Shown here piece by piece: positions 3,976 to 39,162 of a stretch of DNA of 64,000 bases. The stretch lies in sequence record KJ019146.1; one strand, 5' to 3'. The notes under the pieces were generated by a model. The model was not told the DNA's origin and did not search any database. It was given only the letters and a program-made list of their open reading frames with translations. The translations under genes and the position numbers were made by a program. Every line of letters begins with the position of its first letter. Position 1 is the stretch's first letter.

Positions 3976-4756
3976 AACTATATGGATGTGTTGGTTCCAG
4001 GGTTGGGATAAGGCACCAGAGATTACAGAGAAGTGTTTAGAGTCCTGGAAACACTACAATAGTGATTGGGATATTGTTCTACTAGATGAATCCAACTACA
4101 AGGATTACATCTCCATTGATAAAGAACTACCAGGACTGAAGACAAACTATATCTCACTGGGTGATATCCTTCGTCTCTTTCTACTAAAAGAGCATGGTGG
4201 AGTATGGGCAGATGCAACTATCTTCTGCAACAAACCAGTGGATTGGGTTTTGGATTATGAGGATTCTTTCATCTTCACCAGGAAGGATAAGATGATTGCC
4301 TCTTGGTTTGTTGCTGCTCAGAAAGATTCCCATGTTGTAGATGTATGGTATAATAAGATGTTAGAGTTCTGGAAGTATCGTATGGAAAATACAGATACTT
4401 TCGAGCAACAATATGGTTGGATACACGCTTTGTTCCGTCAGTCCTACGCTCAGGATAAGGGGTTCAGGGATATTGTAGATAGTATGGATAAGATTGATTG
4501 CATGAGTGATGGTCAATCTAGAGGTAAGGGTCCGCACTTCTTTGCACCCTACAGTAAATACTTCTACAACCCTATCAGTGACACGATAAAGAATCGTATA
4601 GACTCTAAAGTTGATCCACTATATAAGTTGTCTTACAAGGCAAACACAGACTGGAGAAGTCCAGAGAACAGGGGTATCCACCCAGCAGACCAAAAGATTA
4701 TGTTGGAATATCCAACTAATAGTGAACTACATTATCTACTCAACACATTAAAATGA
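3968..4756 (+). CDS. Capsular polysaccharide synthesis protein / GT32-like glycosyltransferase
   Basis: IWMCWFQG...AP start and DILRLFLLKEHGGVWADAT motif. Confidence 0.82.
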   Translation: MNKTIWMCWFQGWDKAPEITEKCLESWKHYNSDWDIVLLDESNYKDYISIDKELPGLKTNYISLGDILRLFLLKEHGGVWADATIFCNKPVDWVLDYEDSFIFTRKDKMIASWFVAAQKDSHVVDVWYNKMLEFWKYRMENTDTFEQQYGWIHALFRQSYAQDKGFRDIVDSMDKIDCMSDGQSRGKGPHFFAPYSKYFYNPISDTIKNRIDSKVDPLYKLSYKANTDWRSPENRGIHPADQKIMLEYPTNSELHYLLNTLK

Positions 4757-5658
4757 CAAATAAATCATTGGTTACCGGTGGCGCGGGTTTCATCGGGTCA
4801 CATATTGTGGACCGACTTATTACACTAGGACATCAAGTCGTAGTGATTGACAATGAATCCTCTGATGGTCATGATGAATACCATTGGAACAGAAGCGGAC
4901 AAGTACAAAACCATAAGGCAGACATTCGTGACTACGATGCAATCAAACACTTGTTTGGTGGAGTCAATAATGTTTTTCACCTTGCCGCTAAAGCATCAGT
5001 ACAGGCGTCAGTAGATAACCCCCTACCAACTATTGCCACACAGGTAATGGGAACCGCCAATGTATTGGAGGCAGCACGACAATCTGGTGTGAGTAAGTTT
5101 GTATATTCCTCTACTAGTGCTTGTTATGGTAACAACAACCCCATTCCTAATGTAGAAACGATGAGAGAAGATCCTCTCAACGCCTATGCTATTGGTAAGT
5201 TATCTGGGGAACAACTAGTTCGTGCCTATCACTACCTCTATGGTATGAAGACGGTGGCATTCCGTTATACCAATGTATATGGGGAGAGGGCAAGACATGT
5301 AGGACACTATGCTCCTGCTGTTAGTAAGTTCCTAAAGATGAGAGCACAGGGAGAACCTCTAACTATCTTTGGTGATGGTGCCCAACGCCGAGACTTTATT
5401 CATGTATCTGATGTAGTCAACGCTAACTGCTGTATTACCTATGAGGAACTAGAGCAGTGGGGTGAGACCTATAACATTGGTTATGGTAAGAACTGGAGTA
5501 TCCAAGAGATCGCAGACTCTATCAGTCAGGAACAGATTCACCTATCTGCTCGTACTGGTGAGATGCGTGAGACCCTTGCTGATATTGGGAAGGCAAAGGC
5601 AGAGTTGATGTGGAAACCAAAGACTGACATCATGGATTGGATTAGGGTACAACTCTGA
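4753..5658 (+). CDS. NAD-dependent nucleotide-sugar epimerase/dehydratase
   Basis: TGGAGFIGSH Rossmann motif, YAIGK (YxxxK) and RDFIHVSDV. Confidence 0.92.
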   Translation: MTNKSLVTGGAGFIGSHIVDRLITLGHQVVVIDNESSDGHDEYHWNRSGQVQNHKADIRDYDAIKHLFGGVNNVFHLAAKASVQASVDNPLPTIATQVMGTANVLEAARQSGVSKFVYSSTSACYGNNNPIPNVETMREDPLNAYAIGKLSGEQLVRAYHYLYGMKTVAFRYTNVYGERARHVGHYAPAVSKFLKMRAQGEPLTIFGDGAQRRDFIHVSDVVNANCCITYEELEQWGETYNIGYGKNWSIQEIADSISQEQIHLSARTGEMRETLADIGKAKAELMWKPKTDIMDWIRVQL

Positions 5659-20578: not shown

Positions 20579-20953
20579 ATGAATACATATGGTTCTCCTG
20601 AAGGATATCTCTTTAACCTTCATACCTGCTCAGCATCAGAAGCGAAGCGAATGTGGAAAGAATCTATAAAGAATGATTGGAAACAAAAATGTGCGTATTG
20701 TGGATCGGAACATGAAATTACTTTAGATCATATAGTACCCAAAGCAAAAGGTGGCACTAGTCACACAACCAATATCGTAGCCTGCTGTCGTTCTTGTAAC
20801 GCCAGTAAGGCATATGAGGATTGGATTATCTGGTATATTCAACAGCCATTCTTCACTGAAGAGAGGAGGGAGGCTATTGAAAAGTGGATGGAGAAGGGTC
20901 TCCTCAACAATAACTTAGTTGCATATCCACCCAGAAGAAATGTCGTTTATTGA
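20579..20953 (+). CDS. HNH endonuclease
   Basis: CAYCG...TLDHIVPKAKGG...NIVACCRSCNASK. Confidence 0.92.
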   Translation: MNTYGSPEGYLFNLHTCSASEAKRMWKESIKNDWKQKCAYCGSEHEITLDHIVPKAKGGTSHTTNIVACCRSCNASKAYEDWIIWYIQQPFFTEERREAIEKWMEKGLLNNNLVAYPPRRNVVY

Positions 20954-21169: not shown

Positions 21170-24100
21170 ATGATCTCAACAGCGACTAAGATTAAATTTA
21201 AAAGGTCTGGTGTAGCCGGACGTAGACCCTCCTTAGCTGATCTTCAGTTAGGTGAATTGGGGATCAATTATAACGATGGTAAACTATTTTTCCGACAGGA
21301 AAATGAAGTAGTTGGCTCTCGTATCATTGAACCTGGACAGGGTGATGTAATCGGTAAGACTATTTTCGTATCCACAAAGGGTAACGATAACAATAGTGGT
21401 CTTAACGAAAGAGATGCCAAGAGAACTGTTAAAGCGGCCGCCGCAGTAGCAGAACCTGGTGACTCCATCAAACTGTATCCAGGTCAGTACATCGAAGATA
21501 ACCCTATCGTATTTAAGGATAGGGTATCTGTAGAGGGTATGGAGCTTCGTAACGTTCTCGTTACTCCAGCCAACCCCAGTAAAGACTTGTATCAAGTTGG
21601 TGAGGCGTTCCACGCTACCAACCATTCCTTTGTGTCCAATAGGGATTCAACAGATGGTGCCTCTATTATCACCTATCGTCCTCTAGAGGGAACTGCGTCT
21701 GACAGGTATTTTGACGCGGCTAGACTCATCAGGGACAATCTTAGCTTCATTGCTAACGAGACAGTAGGTTTCCTAACCAGTGGATATTCAGGCTTTGCCG
21801 CTGGTCAGAGATCACAGGACGCTGCTCGTGCTCTAGAACTAAACAAGAACTTCATAGTAGAAGAAGCATTTCAATATATTAACTCTCCTGATTATACAGG
21901 AGCCACATACTTCAACCCAGACCCAGCACAGTGTAAGAGAGACCTAGGAAATATCATTGATGGTTGGAGATATGATCTCATCTCTGATGGTAACACCAGA
22001 TCTACTGGTCTTGGTCTAACCTACTACGCACCTATTCCCTTTGTGAATAGTGCTAATGTTGCTGACCTTGTATACAACAGAAATAACGGTGATGTTCTAA
22101 TTGAAACCGACGTAGATACACAGGTTTCAGTTGGTGAGAAGATCAAACTACAGGATATCAGACTAGAGTGTGGTTCCTACAACAACGATTTCCTCATCAC
22201 TGGTTTCAAGTATGATAATACCAGTGGTATTGGAACAGTCAATCTACCATTCATTCATAACGTCAAGGTTGGAGACCTTGTTAAGTTTGATGGTTTAGAG
22301 TTTGATTGTCCTGCCTATGGTGCCATTGAATATGGTATCCAAGACTTCAAGTATAATGAAACTACTGGTGGAAGTGTTGTCACACTCACCGAAGATCACG
22401 ATCTAAAGATTGGTGACACCATTGAACTAAGAGACCTTCAGTTCGATTGTCCCGCCTATGGTGGTGACTTCACTAACATCATCAACCTAGAATACAATAA
22501 GACCAGTGGTCAGGGTGTTATCACATATGACAAACCCGCCGATCTCAAGTCTGGTGACGTTGTTATCCTCTATGACCTCACACTAACTTGTGATGCTTAT
22601 GGTAACGCTATCTCAGTTACTGATTTCTCTTATGATAACTTCACTGGTATCACTGAAGTAGAAGTAAATAGACCCCACAACCTCCGTCCCGGAGACCTAA
22701 TCAAACTAGAGAACCTTAAGTTCTCTTGTGATTCCTACCTTAATGAAACATACAAGGTCTCTAACTTTGTATATAATGAGAGCACTGGTGATAGTGTCCT
22801 CACCCTAACTGAACCACATAGTTTAGTTGCTGGTAAGAACGTCAGACTTGCTGACCTAGTTTTCTCCTGTAACTCCTATGTTCCAACCGCTAAAGCAATC
22901 TCTAATTTCCAGTATGATGAAGTAGTTGGTATCTCTACTATTACTCTAGCATCTCCACACAACTTATCAGTTGGTGAGCAATTCAGACTAGAGGACCTAG
23001 TATTCTCCTGTAACTCATACTCCTTCACTGATATTCCTATCATTGATGCACCATATGATAATGTAACTGGTTATGTAACCCTATCGTTCTCTGGTGACCA
23101 CGGACAACAGGTTGGTGAGAGAGTAAGACTCAGAGATATTGAGTACTCCTGCCCTGGTGGTTCAGGTATCACTACAACCTTGTTCCCTGATGGAACCTTT
23201 GGTTATGAGTTTGAAATCCTAAGTGTTCCAAACACTAAGAAGATGATTCTTAATGTTGGCACCTCCACTATTGAACACTCCTATGTGAGTGGTGGTACTG
23301 CTACCGTTGGTATTACAACTACTATCTTCCCTGATGGAACACAAGGTTTCGACTTCAATGTATCCAGTGTTAATAGTTCCACTGTTATCGAAGCAAGTGT
23401 TGGTATTTCTACCATCGCTCACAACTATGTTTCTGGTGGATCATTATTCGTTGGTTTCACTACCACAGTATTCCCCGATGGAACACAAGGTGATACCTTC
23501 AGAGTTAATTCTATTCCTTCTAGCACTCAAATCAGTGTTAATGTTGGTGTATCTTCTATCGCCCATACTTTCGTATCCGGTGGTACAGCAACTGACCTAG
23601 ACTCTTTCATCCCTGTATCTGGTTTCACCTACAATGAAGGTGACGGAACTGGACTAGTATCCCTAGACAAGGCACACAACCTAGTGGTTGGTGACTCTTT
23701 TGTTCTAGAGGATCTTAAGTTCAACTGTAACTCCTACAGAACAGGTGGTACTTCTACTATTGATATCACTAACTTTGAGTATGATAAGGTAACCGGACTA
23801 TCTACAGTCACACTATCTTCTTCACACAACCTACATGTTAATGATACCGTAGCACTATATGATATCAAGTTCTCTTGTCCTGGTGGTTCAGGTATTACAA
23901 CTAATATCTTCCCCGATGGAACCAGAGACAACTTCTATGATGTAGTTGCTGACCTAAACCCCAACCAGATTATTGTTCGTGTTGGTAAGTCTGACATTAC
24001 TCACACATACGCTAGTGGTGGTAGTCTATCCGTTGGTATCACTACTAACATCTTCCCTGATGGAACTAGACCTTCTGGTGACTTCTTCCAGGTTATCTCT

Positions 24101-27100
24101 GTTCCTTCTACCAAGTCTGTTCTAACTCAGGTTGGTCTATCCTCTATCGCCCACTCATACGCAAGTGGTGGTAAGTTCTACACTGGTATCACTACTAATG
24201 TATTCCCACAGGTATTCACTGACCCCAACATCAAGGTAACCAACGCTGTATATGATGAAGTATCTGGTGTTATCACCATTACTACTAACAAGGCACACGG
24301 ACTTACCGCTACCGCACCTGTTCTACTACAGGACCTAAACTTCTCTTGCCTCTCTGGTGGTGTAGGAAACACCCCAGGCAACCTTGTGTTCCCCAGGAAC
24401 CAGGAAGTTTATGATGTTGTATCCGTTCTATCCCCCACCCAATATACGATCAATGTAGGTCCTTCTGACTTCTCTCACGCATATGTTGATGGTGGTACTT
24501 CTACCACACAGAACATCACTAAGGCATCCTACAACAAAGGAACTGGTGATCTAACAGTAACCCTAGACAAGCAACACGGTTATTCAGTTGGTGATCGTGC
24601 TAGTGTGGTTGATCTCCTCTTCTCCTGTCAGTCTGGTGGTCCTAACAACCAACCTGGAACACTTCTATTCCCTCGTCCTACTGATGAGTATGAAGTTCTA
24701 TCCGCAAGTGGTAAGACACTCACAGTTAATGTTGGAGCGTTCCCATCACTAGTTCATACCTATAAGAATGGTGGATCACTAACCTATAGTTCTACTGTGC
24801 TTCCTGTAACTAACGCAGTTTATGATCAATCAACTGGAGTTCTAACACTCACCACATCAATTGCACTAGGGGCACCTGTTGGTTCTACCATTAAGATGCA
24901 GGGTCTAAACTTCTCCTGTGCTTCTGGTGGTCCTGGTAATGACGCTGGTGCTATTGTATTCCCAAGACTAGACACCCCTACCTTCAAGGTGAAGGAAGTC
25001 AAGAGTGGTGTATCCTATGTTATCAATGTAGGAACCTCTACACTCTCACACACATATACATCTGGTGGTTTCTCCTCACTCAAGAAGTTGAAGAACGACC
25101 CCAATATTTTCAAAGTTATCGACACCCCAACACCCAGTAAGGTTATTACTAATGTAGGTGTCTCATCTATCGCTCATGACTATGTGAGTGGTGGTAATAT
25201 GTTTGTGGGTATCACCACTAATGTATTCCCTGATGGAACTCGCCCTGATGGAAGTAGGTTCGAAGTTATCTCCGCCCTATCACCCAACCAGGCATGTTTG
25301 TGGGTATCACCACTAATGTATTCCCTGATGGAACTCGCCCTGATGGAAGTAGGTTCGAAGTTATCTCCGCCCTATCACCCAACCAGGCACTCATCAACAT
25401 CGGTGTTTCTACTATCACCCACAACTACGATAGTGGTGGTAGGATGCAGTATGGCACTACCAATGAGAGACCTGTTCTAGACTTCCTATATGATGGTCAG
25501 ACTGGTATTTCCACTGTAACCATCAGAGGAACCCATGGTTTGTCACAGGGTGACCTAGTGAAACTCAAAGGTCTTGAGTTCTCTTGCACCAACTCACCTG
25601 GTATTACAACTACTATCTTCCCAGATGGAACTGCCGCTGGTCTCAATATCTACAAGGTTACTGAGATTATTAGTAACAGTACCTTCAAGACAAATGTAGG
25701 TAGAGTTGGATTCGATCATACTTACATCCAAGGTGGTTCCGCTTTCGTTGGTATCACTACTAACATCTTCCCCGATGGAACACAAGGTTATAACTACACA
25801 GTTGCCGCCATTCCTAATAAGAATCAGGTAACAGTTGATGTGGGTATCTCCAGTATCCAACATGATTATATTCGTGGTGGATCACTATTCTCTGGTAAGA
25901 CTAACGAGAGAGATATCGCAGACTTCAAGTATGATCACATCTCTGGTGATGCGGTTCTTACCTTCAGAAAGGCACAGAACTTATTCACACAAGATCTAGT
26001 AAAACTTAAGAACCTTCAGTTTGATTGTCCAAACTCTACTGGTATCACTACTACTCTCTTCCCAGACGGAACCAGAAGTAACCTCTTCCTAATCAAGGAG
26101 AGACTAAACCCAACACAGTTCAAACTCAATGTTGGCACTTCACCATTCGGTCATGACTATGTGAGAGGAACAGGTCAGGCATTCGTTGGTATCACTACTA
26201 ACATCTTCCCTGATACCAAGACACAACCAAGTAAGTTATTCAAGGTTGTTGATGTTCCAACTCCTACTACTATCTCTGCCAAGATTGGTGTATCCACTAT
26301 CTCCCACTCATATGTTAAGGGTGGTAAGGTATTCGTTGGTATTAACACTGATATCTTCCCTGGAGATGAGCAAGTATCACCACTAGGTGACACATATACA
26401 GTTCAGAGTATCACTAAAGATGGTGAGTTGGTTATCAATGTTGGACTATCTTCTATCAGTCACTCCTATGGTGGCGGTGGTAAGGTTCTATATGGACAGA
26501 GTTCTGGTAACAACCTACAACATATCACTGGTCCTGGTGTACTAGACGCAACCATCGCCGCTATCGATTTCGAGAAACAGGTAGCAATCAACGCACTAAA
26601 CAACAGACCTTGGGGTTCATTCGTTCCTGAAGAGACTGCTGTTGTGGAGGCGTTCGCCTATGATAACCAGACTGGTTTCGGAACAGTAACCGCTAGGGGA
26701 ATCAACGTCAACACTGGTGACACCATCAGGATGAGTGACATTCAGTTTGTTTGTTCTGAGGAGTACGCAGGTGTAACCACTACCTTCTTCCCTGATAATA
26801 CTAGACCAGAGGGTCAGTACTTTAGAGTAGAAAGAAGAATCAACATCGATGAGTTTGAAGTTAATATTGGTGTTTCTACTATCAAACACGTCTTCACCTA
26901 CAACACAGGTGGTAACGTATATCGTTACAGACAGTCTATTCTAGATGTTAACTATGATAGATCCAGTGGTATCACTAGTATCCGAGCAACCAAGCATGGT
27001 TACAAGGCAAAAGATATTGTGGAACTAGGTGATATCGAGTTTGATTGCCCCGTATTCAAACCTCAATATGATATTGAGAACTTTGTTTATGATAACACAA

Positions 27101-30100
27101 CTGGTCTATCCACAGTTACTACTACTGTAGATAACACCATCAAGGTAGGTGACAATGTAAAACTAGCAGACATCAAACTAGAGTGTCCTCCATATGGTAA
27201 CCAGAGAGTTATTGATAACTTTGTTTATGATAATAAGAGTGGTCTTTCCACCATATCACTAACAGCAGCACACGGACTCAACCTAAGACCTAGACCTTCT
27301 GTTTCTATCTCTACCGCCCTATATGACAACCAGACTGGTATTCTAACCGTCACTACTAACGCTGACATCAACTTCACTGATAGAAGTGGTCAGGGTGTTC
27401 AACTCAGTGGTCTAAGGTTCTCCTGTGACTCCGCTGGTTTCCCTGGAACTCTCACCTACCCTGAAGAGAATCTAGTTTATGACATCCTAGAGATTCAGTC
27501 TCCTAGTAAGTTCAAGATCAATGTTGGTCTTTCCACTATCGCTCACGAGTATGTGGATGGTGGTGCCGCTACTAAGGTTGATAGATTCGATGTGAAACTA
27601 CAGGGTATCAAGTTTGATTGTCCCGCCTATGGAAACACAATCGATGTTACTAACTTCCTATACGATCAGAGAAGTGGTAACTCACTAGTTACCGTAGATA
27701 AGGCACACAAACTATCTGTTGGTGATAACATCAAACTAGCGGATCTCAAGTTCCAATGTGCTCCATATGGTAACGATTACAATGTTCTAAACGCAGATTA
27801 CGACAACACAACTGGTATTATTACAGTAACCACTAACCAAAACATCAACGGTGTTGGTGTTGGTGATACTATTCGCCTCTCCAGACTACAGTTTGATTGT
27901 GTAGGTAGTGGTCCTGAGTATAATATCACTAACGTATTCTTCAATACTGGTAACAGATCAGTTATTCTCACAGTTCCTGAAAGACCAATTGGTCTAAACC
28001 CAGGTGATGACATTAAACTAACCAATATGTCATACCTAGAAGGTGGTAGTGGTAATGTAGTTGCGTATCCAGATGGAAGAGATTCAAGTCTAAACATCTT
28101 CCGTATCAATGATGTTCAACCTAACTCCATTCTCCCTGGATACTTCGATGTAACCACAGCGTTCCCCAATGTTAAGGATCCTTTCGCGATCTTCAACAAT
28201 ACTGGTAGACTAACCACTGGTATTACTACTAACATCTACCCTGAGAATGTAGGTGCTGAAGGTGGTTTCTATGAAGTTATCCGACTAAGACAAGATAACC
28301 AGTTTGAGATTCAGGTAGGAACCTCTACTATCACTCACAACTATGTGAGACAAGGACAGATGTTTACTGGTGTAACCACCAACTTCTTCCCTGGTAACCT
28401 ACAGAACTCACCTAGAGGAAACATCTTTGAGATTGTGGAAGTTCCCACAGCAACACAGGTGAGAATCAATGTAGGTGTATCTTCTATCTCTCATAGTTAT
28501 GATAGTGGTGGTCAGATGTTTGTTGGTATCACTACTAACATTTTCCCTGATGGAACCAGAGGTAACCTGTTCCCAGTTGTTGGTGTAGCAAATACACTCA
28601 CCCTAAGAATCGACGCTGGTGTATCCAGTATTCCTCACAACTATGTTTCTGGTGGAGAACTATTCGTAGGTATTACAACTAATATCTTCCCTGGTAACTC
28701 ACAGAACTCACCAAGAGGTAGTATCTTCAAGGTCCTATCTAAGGATAATGAGTGTGGTTCTGATAGATTCACTATCAATGTTGGTGTATCTTCCATCACT
28801 CACGGTTATGTTGAGGGTGGAACAGTAACCACTGGTGTTACAACTAACAAGTTCCCTGATGGAACACACGGATTCAAGTTCCCTGTTATCGATGTTCTAG
28901 ATGACAACTACTTCACCGTGAATGTTGGTACTTCTACTATCACTCACAACTATATCTCTGGTGGTTTCACTAGAAGACTTGAAGTTCCTATCAATAGTTT
29001 CGTATATGATAGAGTTTCTGGTCTATCCACAGTGGGTATCCAAAGTCACAGAATGAATATCGGTGACCTTGTGAAACTTCGTGATGTGAAGTTCAACTGT
29101 GATCCATATGGTGGAGAAAAGACTATCTCTGGTGTTGTTTATGATAATACCTCTGGTAGAATGACCGTTAACACCACTGGTTCTCATAGTCTAAACATCA
29201 ATGATGTTGTGAAACTCTCCAATATTCAGTTGGATTGTTCCCCATATGGTAACGAGAGAACTATTACCGCCGCCACCTACAACAGAAACAATGGAAACCT
29301 AAGTGTTCAGGTATCTGAACCTCACAACCTCAAGATTAGTGAGAATGTGAAACTTAAAGGTTTAGAGTTCTCCTGTTCCTCAGAACACGCAGGTGTGACA
29401 ACAACAATCTTCCCAGATTCAACCGCACCTTCTCTAAACATCTACGCCATCCAGAGTATAACCAACTCCACAACCTTCATGGTTAATGTTGGAACCTCTA
29501 CTATCAGTCACAACTATGTTTCTGGTGGTTCCGCTTTCGTAGGTATCACAACTAACATCTTCCCAGGTGATAGCCAGAACTCCCCCAGAGGTTCTTTCCT
29601 CAGTGTGGTAGATATCCCAGCATCAGACGCCTTCGTGGTGAATGTAGGGGTTTCTACTATCTCTCACGGGTATGTTAGAGGTGGATTGGTTCAGACAGGT
29701 ATTACAACTGATGTATTCCCTGATGGAACACAGAGTGATTTCTTCAAGATTGAAGATGTCCCTAGTAATAATACAGTTGTAATCAACGCAGGTATCTCTT
29801 CTATCATCCATAGATACAACTCTGGTGGTTTCGCCGCCAAGTATGTTACCTATCAGTCCAATAACTCACAACTACTTGATAGTTCTGTTATTAGAGTGAG
29901 TGGTGATTGTATGGCAGTTGGTGAGAGAGTTGAAGAACTCGCAGGTATTGTTACCTCCATCATCAAGAATGGTCCTTCAATCGCACCTGGTGGTATTCCA
30001 GTAGATGTGGTAAGTGCATCCTACGACCAGTCTGGTGGAGCACTATCAGTCACAGTCAAAGACGCAATTGACCTCACACCAACTAACATAGTTAGAATCG

Positions 30101-33100
30101 AAGGTCTTATCTTCGAGTGTGAGTCCTCTGGTGTAACAAACACTCGTGTATATCCTGACAATAAGGTATTCAACTATGAGGTTCTATCAGTTCAGTCTCC
30201 AACAACCTTCACTATCAATGTAGGTTCTCAGGCAGATATCCCACACACATATGTGAATGGTGGAACTGTAAGACCAGGTAACAAGTTTGATGTGGCAACC
30301 GCAACCTACAATACTGAAAATGGTATTGTTAGAGTTACTACCACTGAAGATAACTACTTGGTTCTTGGTAGAGGAGTTAACCTACAGGGTCTAAACTTCT
30401 CCTGTACCTCTGGTGGTCCTAACAACAAACCTGGAACACTAACCTTCCCCGACAAAACACCAACCAATGTAACCGCCGCCACATATGATAGTGTGACTGG
30501 TGTATTACGTATCACAACCAACAGACCTCACCAAGCATACAAGGACGCGTTTGTATCCCTAAACGGACTAACCTTCACTTGTGATCCAGGTGGTCCTCTA
30601 GTATTCCCTAGAAACCCTGATACTAAGTCCTTCAGAGTTACTAAGAGAGTTGATGACTACACATATGAGTGTCAGTTGGCACCGACCAATAAGGTTCATA
30701 CTTATCTAAGTGGTGGTACTTCCTCCACAGGAAACGGAAACTTCAGAGTTTCTCGTCTCATTGATACAAAGACCTTCGAAGTCACAATGGTTCCTCTAGA
30801 TCTACCACATACCTATGTAAATGGTGGTTCCGCCGCTAGTGTATTCACTAGACAGATCATTGATGGAATCAACATCAACACTAGGAAGTGTGCTAGAGAC
30901 GTTAGACGTATCTACCTCGCAGTGGCACACGATATCACTCGTGGTGGTAACTGGAAGTGTGTTGAAGGAGCGAAACTCTACTACGATAACGTGGGTCAAA
31001 CCAAGTTTATCTCTGGTGGTGAAGTAAATCAAACCGTTGAGGCACTTGACTTCTCCCTAAACATTGTTAGATGTTTAATCAACAACGTAACATGGGGTGG
31101 AGTTCCAAGAGGATATCTCACTAAGGGTGAGAGAAGTGAACTAAGAATTCCATCTTCAGCTAAGACTTCAGTGGTTGGTTTCAGACAACAACTACTTTCC
31201 AACCAATACACTACTCAGAAGAAGAGTATTTCTGGTATGGTATACGATAACCTTACGGGTATCGCAACCGTCACCACTAAACTCTCACATGAACTCATCA
31301 AGTATGATGGTATTCAACTCTCAGATATTGAGATGAGATGTACTGGTAGTCCAAGGATTACCACCAATGTATTCCCTGATGGAACACAAGGTGAGATCTT
31401 TGAGGTTATGGAAACTCTAGATGATAGAGTAGCATACATCGTAACTGACGCGTCATACACCAACACCACTGGTAAGTTGGTAGTAACAACAACAGGAAAC
31501 AATGATATTCCTGTTGGATCAAGAGCAAAACTAGATGGTTTACTCTGGACTTGTTCATACGATCCTTCAAAACAACTTAAGTTCCCAGAGAACAGGAAGT
31601 TCCGTTATGAGGTTATCGCAAAACCAGATGGTACAACACTAGAGTTCAATGTTGGTATCTCTACGATTCCACACACATTTGTTCCAGCTCCTATAGATGT
31701 TGAATACACAGTCAAGGAGGATCCAGTTAAGTTTAAGGTTCATGTTGGTACAGTTTCCTTCCCACACACCTACTTCGGTGGTGGAACAGTATGGCACAAA
31801 CTACCATTCACTCCACCTTTCACCCAAACACAGATCAAGGACGTATCACAACAGAAAGATCCAGTCCAGTTCTCTAACAATACTCCTAACGGATGTGCTA
31901 ATGTATTCTCCGCTATCAGTAATTGTATTGGTGTTGTTACTAGTATCGTAGCAAATGGATTAGAAGGATCAGGTATCTCCACAACTTATCCAGGTAATGA
32001 TGGTAAAGGTGTTCCAACTATGGATGAGATGCCTTCACAGGGTGTTGGTAACATTATCAAAGGTCCATACATCAGAAACTGTACGAACTTCGTTCCCAAG
32101 TCTATTGGTATGAGAATGGATGGTTTCGACGCGGAACCTGGTGATGAAATCTCCAATGGTGTTCAAGGTTCATCTAACGTTGACTCCTTCACCCAGTTCA
32201 ACCCTGGTGGTGTTGGTTGTTCCATCTCTAACGGAACCTACCAACAGTTGGTTTCTATCTTCACTATCTGTTGTGACGAAGCAATCGTATGTGACTCTGG
32301 AGCACAACTCGACCTCACTAACTCCAACTCTTCCTTCGGTAGATTGGGTCTAGTCGCAAGAGGTATTGGTGACAAACTCTCCAAGTGTATCGACAGATAT
32401 ACTGGTATCGTCGCCAAAGAGGCATCAATCGAAGATGACCTAGTTGTTGTGAAGGGTATTGGTGATAAGAGACCCTACGATGGTCAGGGTATTTTCTTCG
32501 GAGAACTCTTCAGGGATGTGGTTAGTATCGAAGTTCTGGACGGTGGTTCAGGTTACAACGATGATATTCCACCTAACGCGTTTGTCGCAGAACCTACTGG
32601 TCCCGCTGGTATTAAGGCGGAAGTTTCACCAACAGTCAGAGATGGTGTTGTTGTTTCTATCGAGGTTATCGCAAATGGTAACCAATACAGAGAGAAATTC
32701 CCTGAGGTTGTAATATCACCTCCTAAGAGTCCTCTTGGTAGAACCGCAAAAGCAAGGGCAATTACCGAACCTCTCTACTATAATGTAGAAAGTTCTTCCC
32801 CACCTGAAGAGGGTACAACTAGTATCATCTTCAAACAGCGTCTAAATAATACCGTATCGGTAGGCACAACTGTATTCTTCTCTAGATTAAGTCTACAGAT
32901 TGCCTCCTCTCACTCCTTCGAATACATTGGTGCTGGTAACAGCATTAACGGAGCAAGACCTTCTGAAGGTGGAGTTCCAATTAAGGAAAATGAGATCGTG
33001 AAGGAAGACGGTGGTTCAATTGTCTATACCTCCACTGACCAGGCAGGTAACTTTAACATTGGTGACGATTTCGTTATCAACCAGTTCACTGGTACTATCA

Positions 33101-33168
33101 CTGGTAGATCGTTCGATCAATCAGTCCTAAATAAAGTTACTCCACTCATCATCGCCCTAGACAGTTAA
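21170..33168 (+). CDS. Giant virion structural/fibre protein (about 3967 aa), shown as two ORFs (21170-25480, 25294-33168) because of a 95-nt duplication
   Basis: Fibre-type N-terminus (KIKFKRSGVAGRRP...LGELGINYNDGKLF); same repeat families in both halves; removing one duplicate copy gives 11904 nt = 3968 codons in one frame. Confidence 0.85.
25199..25388 (+). repeat. Exact 95-nt tandem duplication (25199-25293 / 25294-25388)
   Basis: Two identical adjacent copies of atgtttgtgggtatc...cccaaccaggc. Confidence 0.97.
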
Positions 33169-33172
33169 GATC

Positions 33173-33523
33173 ATGGCAGCAGTTGCTTTAAATACGTTCA
33201 AAACGGTCAGGCATTTAGTTTCTGATTCCAATGTGGGGATTTATACATCCCCCATTGGTGTTGCCTCTATTGTCCTATACGCTCAGGCGACACACGTTGC
33301 GAACGATGAAAGTGTATATTTCATTAACTTTTCACATGCTCGTCCCGACGAGGATCCTGTGCAGTTTGAAATCATTAAGGATGGTCCAGTTATCCCTAAT
33401 GACGCACTAAACCTATTAACAGGTAGATTAGTTCTCGAAACTGGAGACGAACTTAGAGTATCAGGAAATACGACCGGAGATGTGAAGGTTGTTGTTTCTA
33501 TTCTAGAGACTGCAAAGTCTTAA
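33173..33523 (+). CDS. Small virion structural protein
   Basis: Beta-rich, LVLETGDELRVSG...VVVSILET ending; lies between giant structural genes. Confidence 0.7.
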   Translation: MAAVALNTFKTVRHLVSDSNVGIYTSPIGVASIVLYAQATHVANDESVYFINFSHARPDEDPVQFEIIKDGPVIPNDALNLLTGRLVLETGDELRVSGNTTGDVKVVVSILETAKS

Positions 33524-33555: not shown

Positions 33556-36500
33556 ATGCCTCTAAATTATCTTACCGGAAGAGTAAGTAGATTACAAGTT
33601 GGATTTCCAGGGTTTTCAACAGCAAAGGACCTTACAGTTGATGTAGCAGGTGCCATTGGTATTGATACCCAAAACCCAAGAGCAGCTGCCGACTTCCCAG
33701 ATGTCAGTATCCGTGGTGATATTGTTGACTCTGTTGGATTTACCGGTGGTATTGGGTATTTTCTAGCGCAAGATGTTCAGGGTGTTCGGTGGGTAGAGGC
33801 TCCACCTATCAACTCTAATGCCATCTTAGTGTTAGACAATGGAGTTATCGTTGGTGCTGGATCATTCATTGGTCTAAACTTTGACTCTGGTAAGGATGAG
33901 GACTTCCTCTCGGTTGTTCCTGACCCACTAAACCCACAGATTGCAAAGATTGCATATGATGTTCGTTGGGTAAGATATAATTACGGTAATAATAAAGGTA
34001 TCTCCACAGGTTTTGGAGATAATGGTGACTACTCCTCAATCCCTGGTTATGGAACCACAGAGGCAGTTGGTGTTACCTCAGTTGGTATTGGTACTAACCA
34101 ACCACTAGATGACTTCCAAGTTGGTATTGGATCTACTGGTGTTACTATCAACGGACCTCTAGGTCTAGTTGATGCAGAAATTATTAAAGCAAAATCAATC
34201 TCGGTTGAAGGAAACCTAGAGGTTGAATCACTTATTGTTAGACCTGGTGTTGCCACTCTAACCACTCTAGATGTATTGAACGAGGCGTTCATACCAGTAG
34301 AGTATGTTGGTTTCTCCAGCATTCAAGATGCAAATATTGATGCTCTCTTTGCTAATCAGTTACTAGCAGGTATTACTACCCTAGGTTTCGGTGGTGAAGA
34401 TGTATTCATCCTCAACGACTTATATGTTCAGGGTGGTTTAGGTACCTTCGATGGCGACGTATTCGTTGGTGGAGACCTAACTGTTAAGGGTGAGACGTTC
34501 TTCAACCAGATTAACGCAGTCAACTTATCAGTATCTGGTATTGCCACTATCGTCCAAGCGGAGATAGCTGTTGGTTTAGTTACCGATCTAAAAGTATCTG
34601 GTTTCTCTACACTATCAGATTTCTCATTCAACATTGGTGTTGGTACATACCTAGAACTAGAAGATCTAGATGTATCTGGTGTTGGTAGTTTTGGTGTTGT
34701 CAACTCTGGTGATATTAATGTTAGTGGTGGTTTAACCGCTAGTGAGATTGATGCAGATAAGGGATACATTGGTATTCTCACAGCAGACTCTATTGTATCT
34801 GGTGCAGGTACTATTGGTTCTATCGAGTCTGATGGGAACCTAACAACACTTAATGATATTATTGTTGGTGGTGCTTCAACCTTCGTTGGTTTGGGTACTT
34901 TCCAAGACGATCTCTTTGTTGGTGGTGACCTCTTTGTTAGAGGTGATGTTACCTTTAAGAATATTAATGGTGAACAACTACTAATCAGTGGTATTGGTAC
35001 CATCAAGGAACTAGTCTTTGATAGTGGTATTGGAACCTCACTAGAAGTGAGAGATCAGATTACGACTGGTATATCTACGATCAATGAAGCAGATATTCAA
35101 GATGCCGCTGTTGAGAGACTCACTGTTGGTGATGCAGAGATCATCGGTATCGCAACTATTACCGAGATTGATGTAGATAGAGGTAGAGTTGGTATCCTAA
35201 CTGGTACAGACCTCTCCTATGCTGGTATCGGTACTATCACGGAGATTGATGTTGACCAGGGTAGAGTTGGTCTAGTCACTGGTGACACACTACTATACTA
35301 CGAACAGTCTAGGATCAATAGAGTTACCTTCTTTGATAACTACCTATCAGTTAATCAGAGTCTAAGAGTTTCTGGTCTCTCCACCTTTGTTGGAACAGGT
35401 ACATTCTTCAATGACTTGTATGTTGGTGGTGACCTATATGTTGCTGGTGAACTAAACTTCAAACAACTCAATGGTGAGAACCTATACCTAACTGGTGTTG
35501 GTACCATCTATGATTTACGTAACACTGTTGGTTTCATTACTAACCTCTACGTAGAAGAGTCTGTAACTGGTTTAGCAACCATCAGTAGTCTAGTTGGTTC
35601 TTCCGCTACCATCACAGACTTCACTGGACAGTCACTACTCATCCAGAATCCATTCAACCCAATGCCTTTGGATCCAACTGGGATCCCAGGACAGGGTGTT
35701 ATTGATAGTCTCCTAGTTAGAAACCTAACTTCTTCTAACAACATTCTAGCCAATGACATTGATGCCAACTTCGTTGACACCGATGATCTAAAGGCTGGTG
35801 TTGGTACTATCACTGACCTAGAGTGGACTACCGCTGTTGGTGATGACACTACTACCAATACTCTACAGGTTACTGATACAGCAACCATTAACATCATCGA
35901 TGCCAATCAGATCGATGCCGAAGATGCCAACATTGGAGTTGCCACCCTCTCTAGTCTCCTAGTAACTGGTGTCACTACCTTCAAGGGTCAGGTTGATATT
36001 GAGGATATTGAGTTCGTTGACCAGAGTGTCACCGGTATTTCCTCCATCAACATTCTCAAGTTTAATGTTGGTTATGGAACTTACCTAGAGGTCACTGACT
36101 CAGTAACTGGTGTTGGAACTATTGGTCTTGCCAGTATCACAACCGCTCAGGTATCCTTCCTAGATGTAAGAGATGAGGTAGTTGGAGCATCCACTATTGG
36201 TGTTCTATCAGTAACTGAAGGATTTGCAGTATCTGGTTTCTCCACCTTTGTTGGTTTCACTACCTATAAAGGAGATGTATTTGTTGATGGTAACTTAACT
36301 GTTACTGGTTTCGTTAGTTTCACACAACTAAACGCTGATCAATCACAGATTGGTATCCTAACTGTATTCGATGCGTTAGACGCTAGAACGGGTGTTGGTA
36401 CATTCAAACACCTAGAGACAGTAGATAGTGCAGTTCTATCAGGTGTATCTACCATTGGACTCACAACCTTCAAGAATGGTGATGTTAATATTAACCGCAA

Positions 36501-39162
36501 CCTAACAGTTGGTGGTATCACTACCTTCATTGGTAATGTTTTCATTGAAGATACTGAGTTTGTAGAACTAAGTGTTACCAATCAGGCTAACATTAACAAA
36601 CTATTTGTAAACTCTGGTGTTGCAACTCAGTTCAGTATCGGTGTTGCCACTATCACCCAGTCACTAACAGGTATCGCCACTATTGGTGACCTCAATGTAA
36701 CTGGTCTTTCTACCTTCGTTGGTCTCGCTACCTTCAAGGGTGACGTTAGTATTGATAGTTACCTAGAAGTATCTAAGGATGTTGTAGTTGGTTCAGCACT
36801 AACAGTTCCTAACCTTACATTCACTGATGGTGATGGACAGTTCCTCAATATTCAGGAAGAGGTTGTTGGTGTATCCACTATTGGTTTCGCTAGTATTACA
36901 GATGAGATAGTAGGAACTTCCACTATCTTTAGATCCAATATTCGTGACCTAGCAGTATCCGGTCTCTCCACCTTTATTGGTGATGTGTTGATGGGTTCCA
37001 ACCTAGATGTGGTTGGTGATATATCTGGAACTAATATATCAATTGCACAATCAGTAACTTCTGACACCCTATTCACTAGGTTTGCTGATATTGAGGGATC
37101 CAATACTGGTGTTGCTACTATTGGTTTCGCCACTATAACCGAACTCTTCACTGAGGATCTAACGGTTGTAGGAACCTCCACCTTCGTTGGTTTCACAACG
37201 ATGACGGGAGACCTAAACATTGAGGGTAACCTTAATGTAACTGGTGTTGTTACCTTCCAACAGTTAGACGCAACTCAGTCACAGATTGGTATCCTAACGG
37301 TATTCAACTACCTAGACAACCAAGGAGACCTAAGAGTAGTTGGTTTCTCCACACTCGGTGACTTCTCAGCCAACTCCGGTATCCTTACCAGTATTGAATC
37401 TGGTGAGATTGATGTAACCGGTGATGTTTCTATCGGTGGAACACTAGGTGTTGCCGGTGAAGTTGGTTTCTCCAGTAACTTCTATACCGTTGGTATTACT
37501 ACCCTCGCTTCTGGAACTGGTATTGTTACTACTGGTGGTGACCTCTATGTTGGTGGTAACCTATTCGTATATAACGATATTGTATATGATGAAATCATTG
37601 GTCGTAACCTAGACATTAGTGGTATTGGTACTATCGCAGACCTCAGAGTGGGTCTTGGTAGTATCGCAGACCTTAGAGGTACAACACTCAGGTATCAGAC
37701 TGGTATTATTACTTCACTCAGAGCAGAAGATTCTGAAGTTGGAAGACACATTGGTACTTCAGTTGTTGTAGAGAACATAACTGCTACTGGTCCTTCTACT
37801 TTCGTTGGTGTTGTTACTACTACTAACGAACTCTTTGTTGGAACTAACCTATTCGTAGGTAACAACGCAGATATCCAAGGTGATATCTTCGGTAGAAACC
37901 TAACACTCGAACTAAACGCCTCTGGTACTACACTAGACTTTGATTCAGGTCAGATCGATGACCTTATCTCACAGTATATACTCTCTGATGACTTGTTTGT
38001 CACTGGTATTACTACTTCAGTTGCGGCACAAATCAACTTCCTGAATGTATCTGGTGTAACTACTTCACCTATCATTAACTCCACACTACTAACCAACTCT
38101 GGTTTAGTTACAACTGGTAGTCTATATGTTCAGGGTCTAGCACAGGTAGAAACAACTCTACTTGTAGATGGTAACTCCATCTTCAATGGTCCAGCACTCT
38201 TCAATGATACAGTTACAGTCAATGACGACATTAATGTAACAGGTGATATCACCTTCAACGATATCAGTGGTATTAATGGTAACTTCGCTGGTATTGTTAC
38301 CGCAACGAAACTCAAGTCTAACTTCCTAGAGGTTAATGGTCAAACAGCCATTACTGGTTTAGCAACCTTCTTCAGTGGATTGAATGTAAGAGGTGGTCCT
38401 CTAGTAGTAGATAATCAGATCTTCGCTAACTCTGGTTTCGTTACTACCATTCAGGGTACTGACTTAACATATACTGATGGTATTTTCTTAGGTGATCTAC
38501 AGGTCAATAAGGATACAACCATCAACCAGAACCTAAGAGTTGTTGGTATCACTACCTCAACCAACTTAGATGTATCAGCACAAACTGAAACCTCACTACT
38601 AAGTGTAACGGGTGTAGGTACTATTCCAATCTTATACTCCACCAATGGTGAGTTTAAGACTTCACTCAAGACGGATCAACTCTTCTTTAATACTGGTTTA
38701 GGTACATACCTCAGTGTTACTGATCTAAATGTTGTTGGTGTTGCTACTATCCCAACACTAGACATTGAATTCCTAGAAGCTGACAGAGCTGAAATTGGTA
38801 TTCTAACCGTCACAAATAGAACTGATATCAGTGATACTTCCAGTATCTTTAGTTACAGACTAACTACATCTGGATCAGCCACCAACGTAACTCTCTACGA
38901 CTCCTCAGTTTATAGAAGTTTCGAGGCAAATATCCAAGTATCCACTGGTAGTAGTTTCCAATCTAGTAAGATGCATGGTTTGAGTGATGATAACTCTACA
39001 CCAAATGTACTCTTCAATGAAACTTCCTACCTCTCTAATGGTGGTGAGTTGGCTGAGTTTGATGTATCAGGTTCCGCTGGTAACAATGTTATCCTAACAG
39101 TTACTCCATATACAGTTGGAATTACAACCTATATACTTTCAGTAACCGCGGTAAGGGTCTAA
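33556..39162 (+). CDS. Giant fibre-like protein with GISTF/GLSTF beta-repeats (1868 aa)
   Basis: Recurrent (V)SG(I/L)STFVG..TF..DL.VGG.L.V repeats; G/T/S/V-rich. Confidence 0.8.
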   Translation: MPLNYLTGRVSRLQVGFPGFSTAKDLTVDVAGAIGIDTQNPRAAADFPDVSIRGDIVDSVGFTGGIGYFLAQDVQGVRWVEAPPINSNAILVLDNGVIVGAGSFIGLNFDSGKDEDFLSVVPDPLNPQIAKIAYDVRWVRYNYGNNKGISTGFGDNGDYSSIPGYGTTEAVGVTSVGIGTNQPLDDFQVGIGSTGVTINGPLGLVDAEIIKAKSISVEGNLEVESLIVRPGVATLTTLDVLNEAFIPVEYVGFSSIQDANIDALFANQLLAGITTLGFGGEDVFILNDLYVQGGLGTFDGDVFVGGDLTVKGETFFNQINAVNLSVSGIATIVQAEIAVGLVTDLKVSGFSTLSDFSFNIGVGTYLELEDLDVSGVGSFGVVNSGDINVSGGLTASEIDADKGYIGILTADSIVSGAGTIGSIESDGNLTTLNDIIVGGASTFVGLGTFQDDLFVGGDLFVRGDVTFKNINGEQLLISGIGTIKELVFDSGIGTSLEVRDQITTGISTINEADIQDAAVERLTVGDAEIIGIATITEIDVDRGRVGILTGTDLSYAGIGTITEIDVDQGRVGLVTGDTLLYYEQSRINRVTFFDNYLSVNQSLRVSGLSTFVGTGTFFNDLYVGGDLYVAGELNFKQLNGENLYLTGVGTIYDLRNTVGFITNLYVEESVTGLATISSLVGSSATITDFTGQSLLIQNPFNPMPLDPTGIPGQGVIDSLLVRNLTSSNNILANDIDANFVDTDDLKAGVGTITDLEWTTAVGDDTTTNTLQVTDTATINIIDANQIDAEDANIGVATLSSLLVTGVTTFKGQVDIEDIEFVDQSVTGISSINILKFNVGYGTYLEVTDSVTGVGTIGLASITTAQVSFLDVRDEVVGASTIGVLSVTEGFAVSGFSTFVGFTTYKGDVFVDGNLTVTGFVSFTQLNADQSQIGILTVFDALDARTGVGTFKHLETVDSAVLSGVSTIGLTTFKNGDVNINRNLTVGGITTFIGNVFIEDTEFVELSVTNQANINKLFVNSGVATQFSIGVATITQSLTGIATIGDLNVTGLSTFVGLATFKGDVSIDSYLEVSKDVVVGSALTVPNLTFTDGDGQFLNIQEEVVGVSTIGFASITDEIVGTSTIFRSNIRDLAVSGLSTFIGDVLMGSNLDVVGDISGTNISIAQSVTSDTLFTRFADIEGSNTGVATIGFATITELFTEDLTVVGTSTFVGFTTMTGDLNIEGNLNVTGVVTFQQLDATQSQIGILTVFNYLDNQGDLRVVGFSTLGDFSANSGILTSIESGEIDVTGDVSIGGTLGVAGEVGFSSNFYTVGITTLASGTGIVTTGGDLYVGGNLFVYNDIVYDEIIGRNLDISGIGTIADLRVGLGSIADLRGTTLRYQTGIITSLRAEDSEVGRHIGTSVVVENITATGPSTFVGVVTTTNELFVGTNLFVGNNADIQGDIFGRNLTLELNASGTTLDFDSGQIDDLISQYILSDDLFVTGITTSVAAQINFLNVSGVTTSPIINSTLLTNSGLVTTGSLYVQGLAQVETTLLVDGNSIFNGPALFNDTVTVNDDINVTGDITFNDISGINGNFAGIVTATKLKSNFLEVNGQTAITGLATFFSGLNVRGGPLVVDNQIFANSGFVTTIQGTDLTYTDGIFLGDLQVNKDTTINQNLRVVGITTSTNLDVSAQTETSLLSVTGVGTIPILYSTNGEFKTSLKTDQLFFNTGLGTYLSVTDLNVVGVATIPTLDIEFLEADRAEIGILTVTNRTDISDTSSIFSYRLTTSGSATNVTLYDSSVYRSFEANIQVSTGSSFQSSKMHGLSDDNSTPNVLFNETSYLSNGGELAEFDVSGSAGNNVILTVTPYTVGITTYILSVTAVRV

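What the first reader, a model, noticed from the sequence alone, without database searches (positions are those of the whole stretch)
22040..31800. Recursively nested ('matryoshka') domain architecture in a ~4000-aa virion protein
The protein is made of two half-motifs. A is YD..TG...VT....H.L..GD.V.L.DL.F.C and B is GITT.IFPDGT...F.V......VNVG.S.I.H.YVSGG. Where A is followed at once by B (e.g. CPGGSGITTTLFPDGT near 23150) they form one complete domain. Elsewhere they come in runs that close like balanced brackets: A1-A8, B8 B7 B6, A9 A10 B10 B9, then B5 split by three whole domains, B4, A14B14, B3, A15B15, B2, B1 (15 A and 15 B, about 22050-26495). The later blocks also balance (6 open/6 close with one more domain inside an A half, 3/3, and two nested pairs), giving about 31 domains and depth 8. 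The first nest interrupts a helical unit (CKRDLGNIIDG...TYY | ...ATIAAIDFEKQVAINALNN) whose intact copy lies near 30880-31090 (KCARDVRR...QTVEALDFSLNIVRCLINN). Inference: domains inserted repeatedly into a loop of the previous domain, so the chain runs out and back to form branched arms, with A1 (about aa 295-337) pairing with B1 (about aa 1690-1745). I know of no described phage fibre built this way.
Basis: partly seen in the sequence, partly recalled or inferred. Interest (0 to 1): 0.9.

Follow-up and report, generated by a model that had tools for sequence, protein, structure and literature searches.

The report
Phage fibre protein of self-nested domains
A giant tail-fibre-like gene of a marine cyanophage is built from 31 copies of one small beta domain inserted into each other up to eight deep; only one other case of this kind (six deep, in cyanobacterial RNA polymerase) was found in the literature.

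Summary
The window is Synechococcus phage ACG-2014f (isolate Syn7803C16). Window 21170-33168 (+) is one giant gene, broken once here by a frameshifting insertion and annotated as a single 3967-aa CDS in the one sister isolate checked.

Among complete relatives, 148 of 195 are balanced as detected and 175 of 195 after inferring undetected B halves from spacing. All five apparent exceptions inspected by eye resolved to divergent or split halves.

Where relatives differ by one domain, the extra A and extra B are bracket partners in 27 of 32 cases, usually the innermost pair.

AlphaFold2 gives an all-beta fold. A halves whose partner was left out of the construct were predicted poorly. No coordinates were returned, so physical pairing is inferred.

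Family matches, neighbours and a proteome-backed annotation of a relative point to a tail fibre.

The principle is not unprecedented: cyanobacterial RNA polymerase Si3 has nine recursively inserted domains, six levels deep. I rate this a new, more extreme variant in a new fold and setting. Interest 0.72.

The parts
21170..33168 (+). Giant tail-fibre-like gene. It is broken once in this isolate (one frameshifting insertion) and is a single 3967-aa CDS in the sister isolate checked.
   Evidence: It matches phrog_3442 over its full length, and phrog_17885 'tail fiber protein' at both ends.
21170..22054 (+). N-terminal conserved region (aa 1-295): short beta strands, then a helical bundle that ends in the first half of helical unit 1.
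   Evidence: phrog_17885 profile positions 1-236, plus other tail-fibre and baseplate PHROGs. Conserved in smaller relatives. The AF2 secondary structure is of low confidence.
22055..26487 (+). Nest 1: 15 domains, depth 8, inserted in helical unit 1. Bracket tree: 1>2>{3>{4>5>{6>7>8, 9>10, three domains inside the B half of 5}, 14}, 15}.
   Evidence: HMM scan. Same string in the intact sister isolate and in S-CAM7.
22055..23152 (+). Run of eight A halves (A1-A8), spaced about 47 aa apart.
   Evidence: i-E-values 1e-15 to 1e-20.
23162..23590 (+). B8, B7 and B6, which close A8, A7 and A6.
   Evidence: In AF2 job 2 only A6-A8 are well predicted.
23612..24178 (+). Closed two-level nest A9 A10 B10 B9.
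26488..26640 (+). Second half of helical unit 1.
   Evidence: BLASTP to the intact unit, E 1e-4. The unit is contiguous in smaller relatives.
26641..26919 (+). Single contiguous AB domain.
26935..28971 (+). Nest 2: six levels plus one whole domain inside a split A half. The innermost domain is degenerate and lacks both the Cys and the His.
   Evidence: weak hits for the innermost pair. S-CAM7 carries a two-level nest where this gene has one domain inside the split A.
28987..29835 (+). Nest 3: AAABBB.
   Evidence: AF2 job 1 gave pLDDT 76.5, all-beta, three strands per A and four per B.
29836..30003 (+). Non-repeat spacer.
   Evidence: No A or B hit.
30004..30270 (+). Single contiguous AB domain. 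S-CAM7 has a two-level nest here.
30289..30834 (+). Domain whose B half is split by a whole AB domain.
   Evidence: partial B hits covering head and tail profile positions.
30835..31224 (+). Helical unit 2, the uninterrupted copy.
31225..31791 (+). Domain whose B half is split by a whole AB domain.
31801..33165 (+). C-terminal conserved domain (455 aa), shared with 0.8-1.5 kaa fibre proteins of many cyanomyoviruses.
   Evidence: tblastn found 112 phage records. phrog_17885 positions 630-1001. No PDB, Pfam or NCBIfam relative.
33173..33523 (+). Conserved small downstream gene (116 aa) of unknown function.
   Evidence: A 112-120-aa gene follows every homologue fetched. phrog_1276.

Best explanation
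The gene encodes a giant tail-fibre-like virion protein of a T4-like cyanophage. Its N- and C-terminal parts are shared with ordinary-sized fibre proteins. Between them lie 31 copies of one all-beta domain of about 90 residues.

The domain is written in two halves. A has three strands and ends in F-x-C. B has four strands and ends in H-x-Y-x-x-G-G. New copies sit in the short A|B junction of older copies, and twice inside a half.

The chain therefore runs outward through the A halves, turns at the innermost contiguous domain, and returns through the B halves, closing each bead on the way back. The result should be branched arms of beads. Each bead-to-bead joint is crossed twice by the chain, and both ends of an arm meet at its base, so a whole arm can sit in a loop of the helical scaffold. 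Arms change length mainly at the tip.

Shown: the order of halves, balance across relatives, partner-wise insertions and deletions, and joint loss of the Cys and His. Predicted: the beta fold and the dependence of A on B. Inferred: physical pairing of distant halves, arm shape, and a role in host-surface binding.
For: - Order and balance in the window and in the intact sister isolate and S-CAM7.
- Family test: 161 of 218 proteins are balanced as detected, and every protein with equal counts is balanced, across 33 architectures.
- Among complete proteins, 148 of 195 are balanced as detected and 175 of 195 after inferring undetected B halves from A-to-A spacing.
- Five apparent exceptions inspected by eye all resolved.
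- In blocks with a relative one pair shorter, the extra A and B are bracket partners in 27 of 32 cases (about 12 expected by chance) and in 22 of 24 with a clear margin.
- The minimal relatives S-T4 and Sf-CH8 have exactly one A followed by one B.
- All 8 contiguous domains lacking the A-half Cys also lack the B-half His (Fisher p 2e-12).
- A-to-B column couplings are as strong as those within a half.
- AF2: the closed nest is all-beta with pLDDT 76.5. An independent BFVD model of the paralogous nest superposes at TM 0.68. Partnerless A1-A5 score about 46-69 against about 75-80 for A6-A8, and lack the third strand.
- Fibre assignment: phrog_17885 'tail fiber protein'; UniProt names 'Tail fiber-like protein' and 'Long tail fiber protein'; the S-SCSM1 homologue carries a 'virion protein' note in its record, in a phage whose virion proteome was measured (PMC9602691); baseplate genes lie downstream.
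Against: - No coordinates or contact maps were available, so no A(i)-B(i) contact was seen directly.
- A partner-likelihood test trained on contiguous domains is strong only with the full alphabet, which probably reflects shared ancestry. It is weak with a reduced alphabet (p about 0.003-0.6, depending on settings) and mixed for the window's own nests.
- AF2 pTM is low (0.46 and 0.27), and the pLDDT gradient across A1-A5 may partly reflect the poorly predicted N-terminal neighbour.
- In more distant families only 48 of 78 complete proteins are balanced even after inference. I attribute this to weak detection of divergent B halves, but checked only five cases by eye.
- No direct evidence exists for this protein in ACG-2014f virions.
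- The gene is broken in this isolate.
Confidence: 0.8

Rival explanations
1. The bracket pairing is right, but the halves do not form discrete beads. The outgoing A run and returning B run would form one continuous two-layer or domain-swapped beta structure, as partly happens in RNA polymerase Si3.
For: AF2 pTM of only 0.46 for the closed nest. Si3 domains are reported to exchange secondary-structure elements (PMC11515920). Linkers between successive halves are very short.
Against: The minimal relatives have a single AB unit flanked by helices, so one A plus one B is a self-sufficient unit. Insertions and deletions come as whole A+B units. Foldseek's weak best matches are single small barrels such as E1 FCCH.
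Confidence: 0.1
2. A and B are two independent small modules, each folding alone or with its neighbours in the run. Equal numbers and bracket order would be historical accident.
For: Runs of up to eight A without any B look like ordinary tandem repeats. The reduced-alphabet partner test is weak.
Against: Balance across 33 architectures. Partner-wise insertions and deletions. Joint Cys/His loss. A halves without partners are predicted poorly and lose a strand. No relative was verified with A only or B only.
Confidence: 0.04
3. Pairing is between chains. In an oligomeric fibre, the A halves of one chain are completed by B halves of another.
For: Tail fibres are usually trimers (general knowledge). 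Nothing here tests the oligomeric state.
Against: The 3-residue junction in contiguous AB units and the single-domain relatives favour closure within one chain. Monomer AF2 closes the nest at pLDDT 76.5.
Confidence: 0.04
4. The nested pattern is an artefact of assembling repetitive DNA.
For: The gene is highly repetitive at protein level, and this record carries a frameshifting insertion that could be a sequencing or assembly error.
Against: The copies are only about 25-45% identical in protein. 48 other isolate records match 90-100%. The five metagenomic orthologues whose nests were aligned are about 60% identical to the window there, and their bracket strings have the same layout, differing only by whole A+B units.
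Confidence: 0.01

Closest known systems
Si3 insertion of cyanobacterial RNA polymerase beta' (nine HABAS / sandwich-barrel hybrid domains recursively inserted into each other; six levels in Prochlorococcus rpoC2)
   Same: One small beta domain family is inserted repeatedly into copies of itself, giving A1-B1-C-B2-A2 patterns, branching nodes and an arm that projects from a loop of the host fold (PMC11515920; PMC13114784).
   Different: The fold is apparently different: no RNA polymerase chain appears among the 50 best Foldseek matches. The setting is a virion fibre, not an enzyme. The scale is 31 domains and depth 8 (at least 10 in relative P0213), against 8-9 domains and depth 6. That depth of 6 was the deepest case highlighted in a survey of 2.7 million domains.
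Cyanomyovirus tail-fibre family phrog_17885 (S-SCSM1 'long tail fiber protein', S-CAM9, S-T4, Sf-CH8, P-SSM2 'tail fiber protein')
   Same: Homologous N- and C-terminal regions, the same AB domain between them, and the same small downstream gene.
   Different: Those proteins have 1-8 domains and depth 1-4. This one, with its S-CAM7-like orthologues (phrog_3442), has 31-34 domains and depth 8.
E1 FCCH beta-barrel and other inserted barrels (P22 coat I-domain, endosialidase barrel)
   Same: These are the weak best structural matches (2v31 TM 0.53 on the target). All are small barrels that occur as insertions. FCCH-like domains are known on phage tail tubes (PMC13576161).
   Different: No match reaches E 1e-3. 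Pfam PF16190 does not hit the window's protein. None of these is nested in itself.
Beads-on-a-string arrays of Ig-like or other small domains on phage fibres and capsids
   Same: Many copies of a small beta domain decorate a virion protein.
   Different: In those arrays each domain is contiguous and neighbours are joined by one linker. Here 17 of 31 domains are discontinuous, and the chain crosses each joint twice (general knowledge for the comparison).
T4 gp37 needle and pilus adhesin RrgA (both from my own knowledge, not tested here)
   Same: In the gp37 tip the chain runs out and back. RrgA has domains nested two to three deep.
   Different: gp37 uses extended strands rather than globular beads. 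RrgA nests different domains to a shallow depth. No sequence relative of either was returned.

Membership tests
Cyanomyovirus tail-fibre family (phrog_17885 / phrog_3442) | Conserved N-terminal region | tested here: met
   aa 1-294 match phrog_17885 positions 1-236 (E 1e-109) and phrog_3442 positions 1-295.
Cyanomyovirus tail-fibre family (phrog_17885 / phrog_3442) | Conserved C-terminal domain | tested here: met
   The last 455 aa match phrog_17885 positions 630-1001 (E 9e-123). tblastn hits 112 phage records, many annotated as tail fiber.
Cyanomyovirus tail-fibre family (phrog_17885 / phrog_3442) | Presence in the virion | not testable with these tools
   By homology only. The S-SCSM1 homologue is marked 'virion protein' in its record, and that phage's proteome is described in PMC9602691.
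Recursive self-insertion architecture (as in RNA polymerase Si3) | Halves of one domain are separated by complete copies of the same domain, giving a balanced bracket order | tested here: met
Recursive self-insertion architecture (as in RNA polymerase Si3) | Separated halves physically form one domain | tested here: inconclusive
   Indirect support only: partner-wise insertions and deletions and the AF2 result for partnerless A halves. No coordinates were available.
HABAS / sandwich-barrel hybrid motif fold | Structural similarity to RNA polymerase hybrid-motif domains | tested here: not met
   No RNA polymerase chain among the 50 best Foldseek PDB matches of the nest model. No PDB sequence relative.
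E1 FCCH domain (Pfam PF16190) | Pfam match above the gathering score | tested here: not met
   No PF16190 hit for the window's protein. Only a 'faint' precomputed hit on relative P0005.
E1 FCCH domain (Pfam PF16190) | Fold similarity | tested here: inconclusive
   Best Foldseek PDB matches are Uba1/Uba6 and 2v31 (E 5e-3 to 0.1, TM 0.53 on 2v31), all above 1e-3.
Tandem (beads-on-a-string) repeat protein | Every repeat unit is contiguous in sequence | tested here: not met
   17 of 31 domains are discontinuous.

The most novel reading that the evidence does not exclude
This is a previously undescribed class of virion fibre: a branched tree of small barrels made by self-nesting, in which each joint is strapped twice by the chain and arms lengthen or shorten by gain or loss of a domain at the tip. 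It holds the deepest self-nesting on record (8 here, at least 10 in a relative). A conserved Cys/His pair may clamp the two halves of each bead. Because outer beads can close only after more than 1,000 further residues are made, folding would have to proceed from the tip inward, perhaps helped by the conserved small downstream gene.
Probability: 0.45. Interest if true: 0.85.

Novelty: new variant of a known kind. Interest (0 to 1): 0.72.

Why it matters
Phage receptor-binding fibres are normally described as trimeric rods or strings of contiguous domains. Here the sequence order itself encodes a tree: the chain goes out and comes back.

If confirmed by structure, three things would follow:
- A second and much larger natural example of recursive self-insertion, outside RNA polymerase.
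- A simple evolutionary route for tuning fibre length and branching, by adding or removing a domain at the tip.
- A hard test case for co-translational folding, with domain halves up to about 1,360 residues apart.

It also matters for annotation. Domain finders that expect contiguous domains will miss or miscount such proteins; Pfam returns nothing here.

The family is small (644 clusters among 1.84 billion representatives). All named relatives are from marine cyanophages, where host-range determinants are poorly known.

Tried and rejected
- Searches that returned nothing useful: Pfam and NCBIfam on all parts; PDB sequence searches with single sequences and with profiles of the C-terminal domain and the AB domain.
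- Foldseek against the PDB gave no match below E 1e-3.
- Partner-likelihood test. I trained column couplings on contiguous AB domains and asked whether a nested A prefers its bracket partner. With the full alphabet the preference is strong, but scores are dominated by unseen residue pairs and probably by shared ancestry. With a reduced alphabet and heavier regularisation it is only weakly positive, and for the window-like protein it favours the bracket partner in one nest, ties in one and disfavours it in one. I count this as weak support only.
- Best-match concordance of A and B between orthologues is mostly positional and says little (second part).
- My first attempt to iterate the HMMs let the model length drift, and I discarded it.
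- AF2 job 2 did not give a usable N-terminal model (pLDDT 30-58), so I ran no fold search on it.
The construct with partnerless A halves was used instead.
- Considered and rejected: a circularly permuted domain (B followed by A). Every array starts with A and ends with B, and the single-domain relatives have A then B.
- The coevolution preprint on S-CAM7 names no gene that could be tied to this one.
Full report
**What the window is.** The region matches Synechococcus phage ACG-2014f isolate Syn7803C16 (KJ019146.1; Kyanoviridae, Atlauavirus) at 100% identity. Window 21170-33168 on the + strand is one very large gene. In this isolate it is broken once, by a frameshifting insertion, and is annotated as two hypothetical proteins. 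The other listed isolate records align without that insertion and show one annotated feature. In KJ019151.1 the gene is a single CDS of 3967 aa. The two pieces were analysed apart, and naturally intact relatives were read as they stand.

**Checking the observation.** I built profile HMMs of the two half-motifs from the window's own copies: A with 39 positions and B with 46-47.

- A1-A8.
- B8 B7 B6.
- A9 A10 B10 B9.
- A B head, three complete AB domains, then the B tail.
- B, AB, B, AB, B, B.

That is 15 A and 15 B in a balanced bracket word of depth 8 (22055-26487).

After the second half of a helical unit come, in order:
- one AB domain;
- a six-level nest with one whole domain inside a split A half (its innermost domain is degenerate);
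- a clean AAABBB;
- a spacer;
- one AB domain;
- a domain whose B half is split by a whole AB domain;
- an intact helical unit;
- a second domain with a split B;
- a 455-aa C-terminal domain.

The total is 31 domains: 14 contiguous and 17 discontinuous. No other frame of the window has either motif.

The interrupted helical unit resembles the intact one only weakly (E 0.005 and 1e-4). However, smaller relatives carry it uninterrupted at exactly this place.

**Is the balance more than chance?** One protein alone proves little, because a random order of n A and n B is balanced with probability 1/(n+1). The family is the real test.

Phage records gave these strings:

| Phage | Length (aa) | String |
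|---|---|---|
| S-T4, Sf-CH8 | 836 | AB |
| S-SKS1 | 928 | AB AB |
| S-CAM9 | 920 | AABB AABB |
| S-SCSM1 | 1478 | AB AAABBB AB |
| S-CAM7 | 4168 | same as ACG-2014f, but AABB at two places where ACG-2014f has AB |

Two protein searches returned 211 relatives. With iterated profiles, 161 of the 218 proteins scanned (the 211 plus seven read from phage records) are balanced as detected. Every protein with equal counts is balanced, and there are 33 distinct architectures with depths 1-8.

The unbalanced ones fall into three groups:
- fragments at contig ends;
- the giants' one degenerate innermost B;
- distant families whose B half has diverged.

A-to-A spacing separates the last two situations. 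About 47 aa means nested A halves; about 87 aa means an A followed by an undetected B. Counting only complete proteins gives 148 of 195 balanced as detected and 175 of 195 after that inference.

As an out-of-sample set, a profile of 13 contiguous AB units was searched against 1.84 billion representatives. It found 644 proteins. Of 78 complete new ones, 34 are balanced as detected and 48 after inference.

I inspected five apparent exceptions by eye. All resolved into divergent B halves or split halves. One of them, P0213 (5469 aa), nests to depth 10 or more. I found no verified counter-example, but the distant families are not fully tested.

**Do A and B belong together, and in bracket order?**
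1. The minimal relatives have exactly one A followed by one B between helices.
2. In contiguous domains the Cys that ends A and the His near the end of B are lost together: 8 of 8 cases, Fisher p 2e-12. A-to-B column couplings are as strong as couplings within a half.
3. Insertions and deletions. Among 32 closed blocks with a relative one pair shorter, the extra A and extra B are bracket partners in 27, against about 12 expected by chance, and in 22 of 24 with a clear margin. Most are the innermost contiguous pair. At both S-CAM7/ACG-2014f differences, the shared domain corresponds to the outer A and outer B, and the extra domain is the inner pair. A four-level versus three-level comparison shows the two outer levels conserved in both halves (95-100% in A, 93-96% in B) and the innermost domain doubled. 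This is what insertion of a whole domain into the A|B junction predicts.
4. Geometry. The last A of a run is joined to the first B by about three residues. If each A pairs with one B, the order can therefore only be antiparallel, that is, nested.
5. A partner-likelihood test gave only weak support (see tried and rejected).

**Structure prediction.** A closed AAABBB nest (window 28975-29841, 19-row alignment of natural orthologous and paralogous nests) gave mean pLDDT 76.5 and pTM 0.46. It is all-beta, with three strands per A and four per B. The independent BFVD model of the paralogous nest superposes on it at TM 0.68 over 299 columns.

The second job held the N-terminus, A1-A8 and only B8-B6 (window 21170-23599). 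Approximate pLDDT values, read from 10-residue block means:

| A halves | Partner in construct | pLDDT | Strands |
|---|---|---|---|
| A1, A2, A3, A4, A5 | absent | 46, 51, 61, 60, 69 | two short strands each |
| A6, A7, A8 | present | 80, 75, 80 | all three strands |

All eight A halves had the same alignment depth. This fits the bracket model and argues against A halves folding with each other. It is not decisive, because the tool returns no coordinates and the neighbouring N-terminal region was itself poorly predicted.

**What the protein is.** The gene matches phrog_3442 over its full length. Both ends match phrog_17885, 'tail fiber protein', and other tail-fibre and baseplate families. 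UniProt names for the same or related proteins are 'Tail fiber-like protein' and 'Long tail fiber protein'. The S-SCSM1 homologue is marked 'virion protein' in its record, and that phage's virion proteome was measured by mass spectrometry (PMC9602691). Baseplate wedge genes follow downstream.

Pfam, NCBIfam and the PDB give nothing. The weak best fold matches are small barrels that are themselves insertions: E1 FCCH, the P22 coat I-domain and the endosialidase barrel.

**Mechanism proposed.** The chain runs out through the A halves to a contiguous tip domain and back through the B halves, closing one bead per step. The bracket tree of nest 1 is 1>2>{3>{4>5>{6>7>8, 9>10, three domains in the B half of 5}, 14}, 15}, so the arm is branched.

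Each joint is crossed twice by the chain, which should stiffen it. Both ends of an arm meet at its base, so it can sit in a loop of the helical scaffold. Length changes at the tip. Outer beads cannot close until the whole interior has been made. The conserved small downstream gene is a candidate helper, but this is untested. Host-surface binding is inferred from the fibre context only.

**Comparison with what is known.** I found no paper describing nested domains in a phage fibre.

The principle itself is known. In cyanobacterial RNA polymerase beta', nine HABAS (sandwich-barrel hybrid) domains are recursively inserted into each other to form Si3 (PMC11515920). A survey of 2.7 million classified domains highlights that six-level case as the extreme (PMC13114784).

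The phage protein differs in apparent fold, in setting and in scale. No RNA polymerase chain is among the 50 best Foldseek matches. It has 31 domains and depth 8, and a relative reaches at least 10.

**Verdict.** Novelty: new variant of a known kind. Interest 0.72.

Noticed in passing
window 33173-33523 (+): A 116-aa gene directly follows the giant gene. A gene of 112-120 aa sits in the same place after every homologue fetched, from 1.5-kaa to 4.3-kaa versions. It matches phrog_1276, of unknown function. It may be an assembly factor for the fibre.
   Followed up: partly
window 20579-20953 (+): A small 'putative endonuclease' gene lies just upstream of the giant gene, and also upstream of the S-CAM7 orthologue.
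   Followed up: no
window 21170-33168 (+): The gene is broken once (a frameshifting insertion) in this isolate only. The other isolate records listed carry it as a single annotated feature, confirmed as one intact CDS in KJ019151.1. Whether the break is real or an assembly error cannot be told from the sequence. If real, the two pieces would separate the four outermost A halves from their B partners.
   Followed up: partly
window about 22000-32000: GC skew is negative across the repeat region and positive on both sides. This probably reflects the amino-acid composition of the repeats.
   Followed up: no
protein P0213 (metagenome, 5469 aa), aa about 3359-4784: The same two half-motifs are nested to depth 10 or more, with a different protein context in front. 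This is deeper than the window's protein.
   Followed up: partly
all AB domains, e.g. window 23024-23305: The Cys ending half A (present in 99% of copies) and the His near the end of half B (94%) are lost together: 8 of 8 contiguous domains lacking the Cys also lack the His. This suggests a contact or a metal site bridging the two halves.
   Followed up: partly
window 33556-39162 (+): The next gene (1868 aa) matches baseplate-wedge PHROGs and has its own internal repeats, with several matched stretches per family. It has no A or B motif.
   Followed up: no
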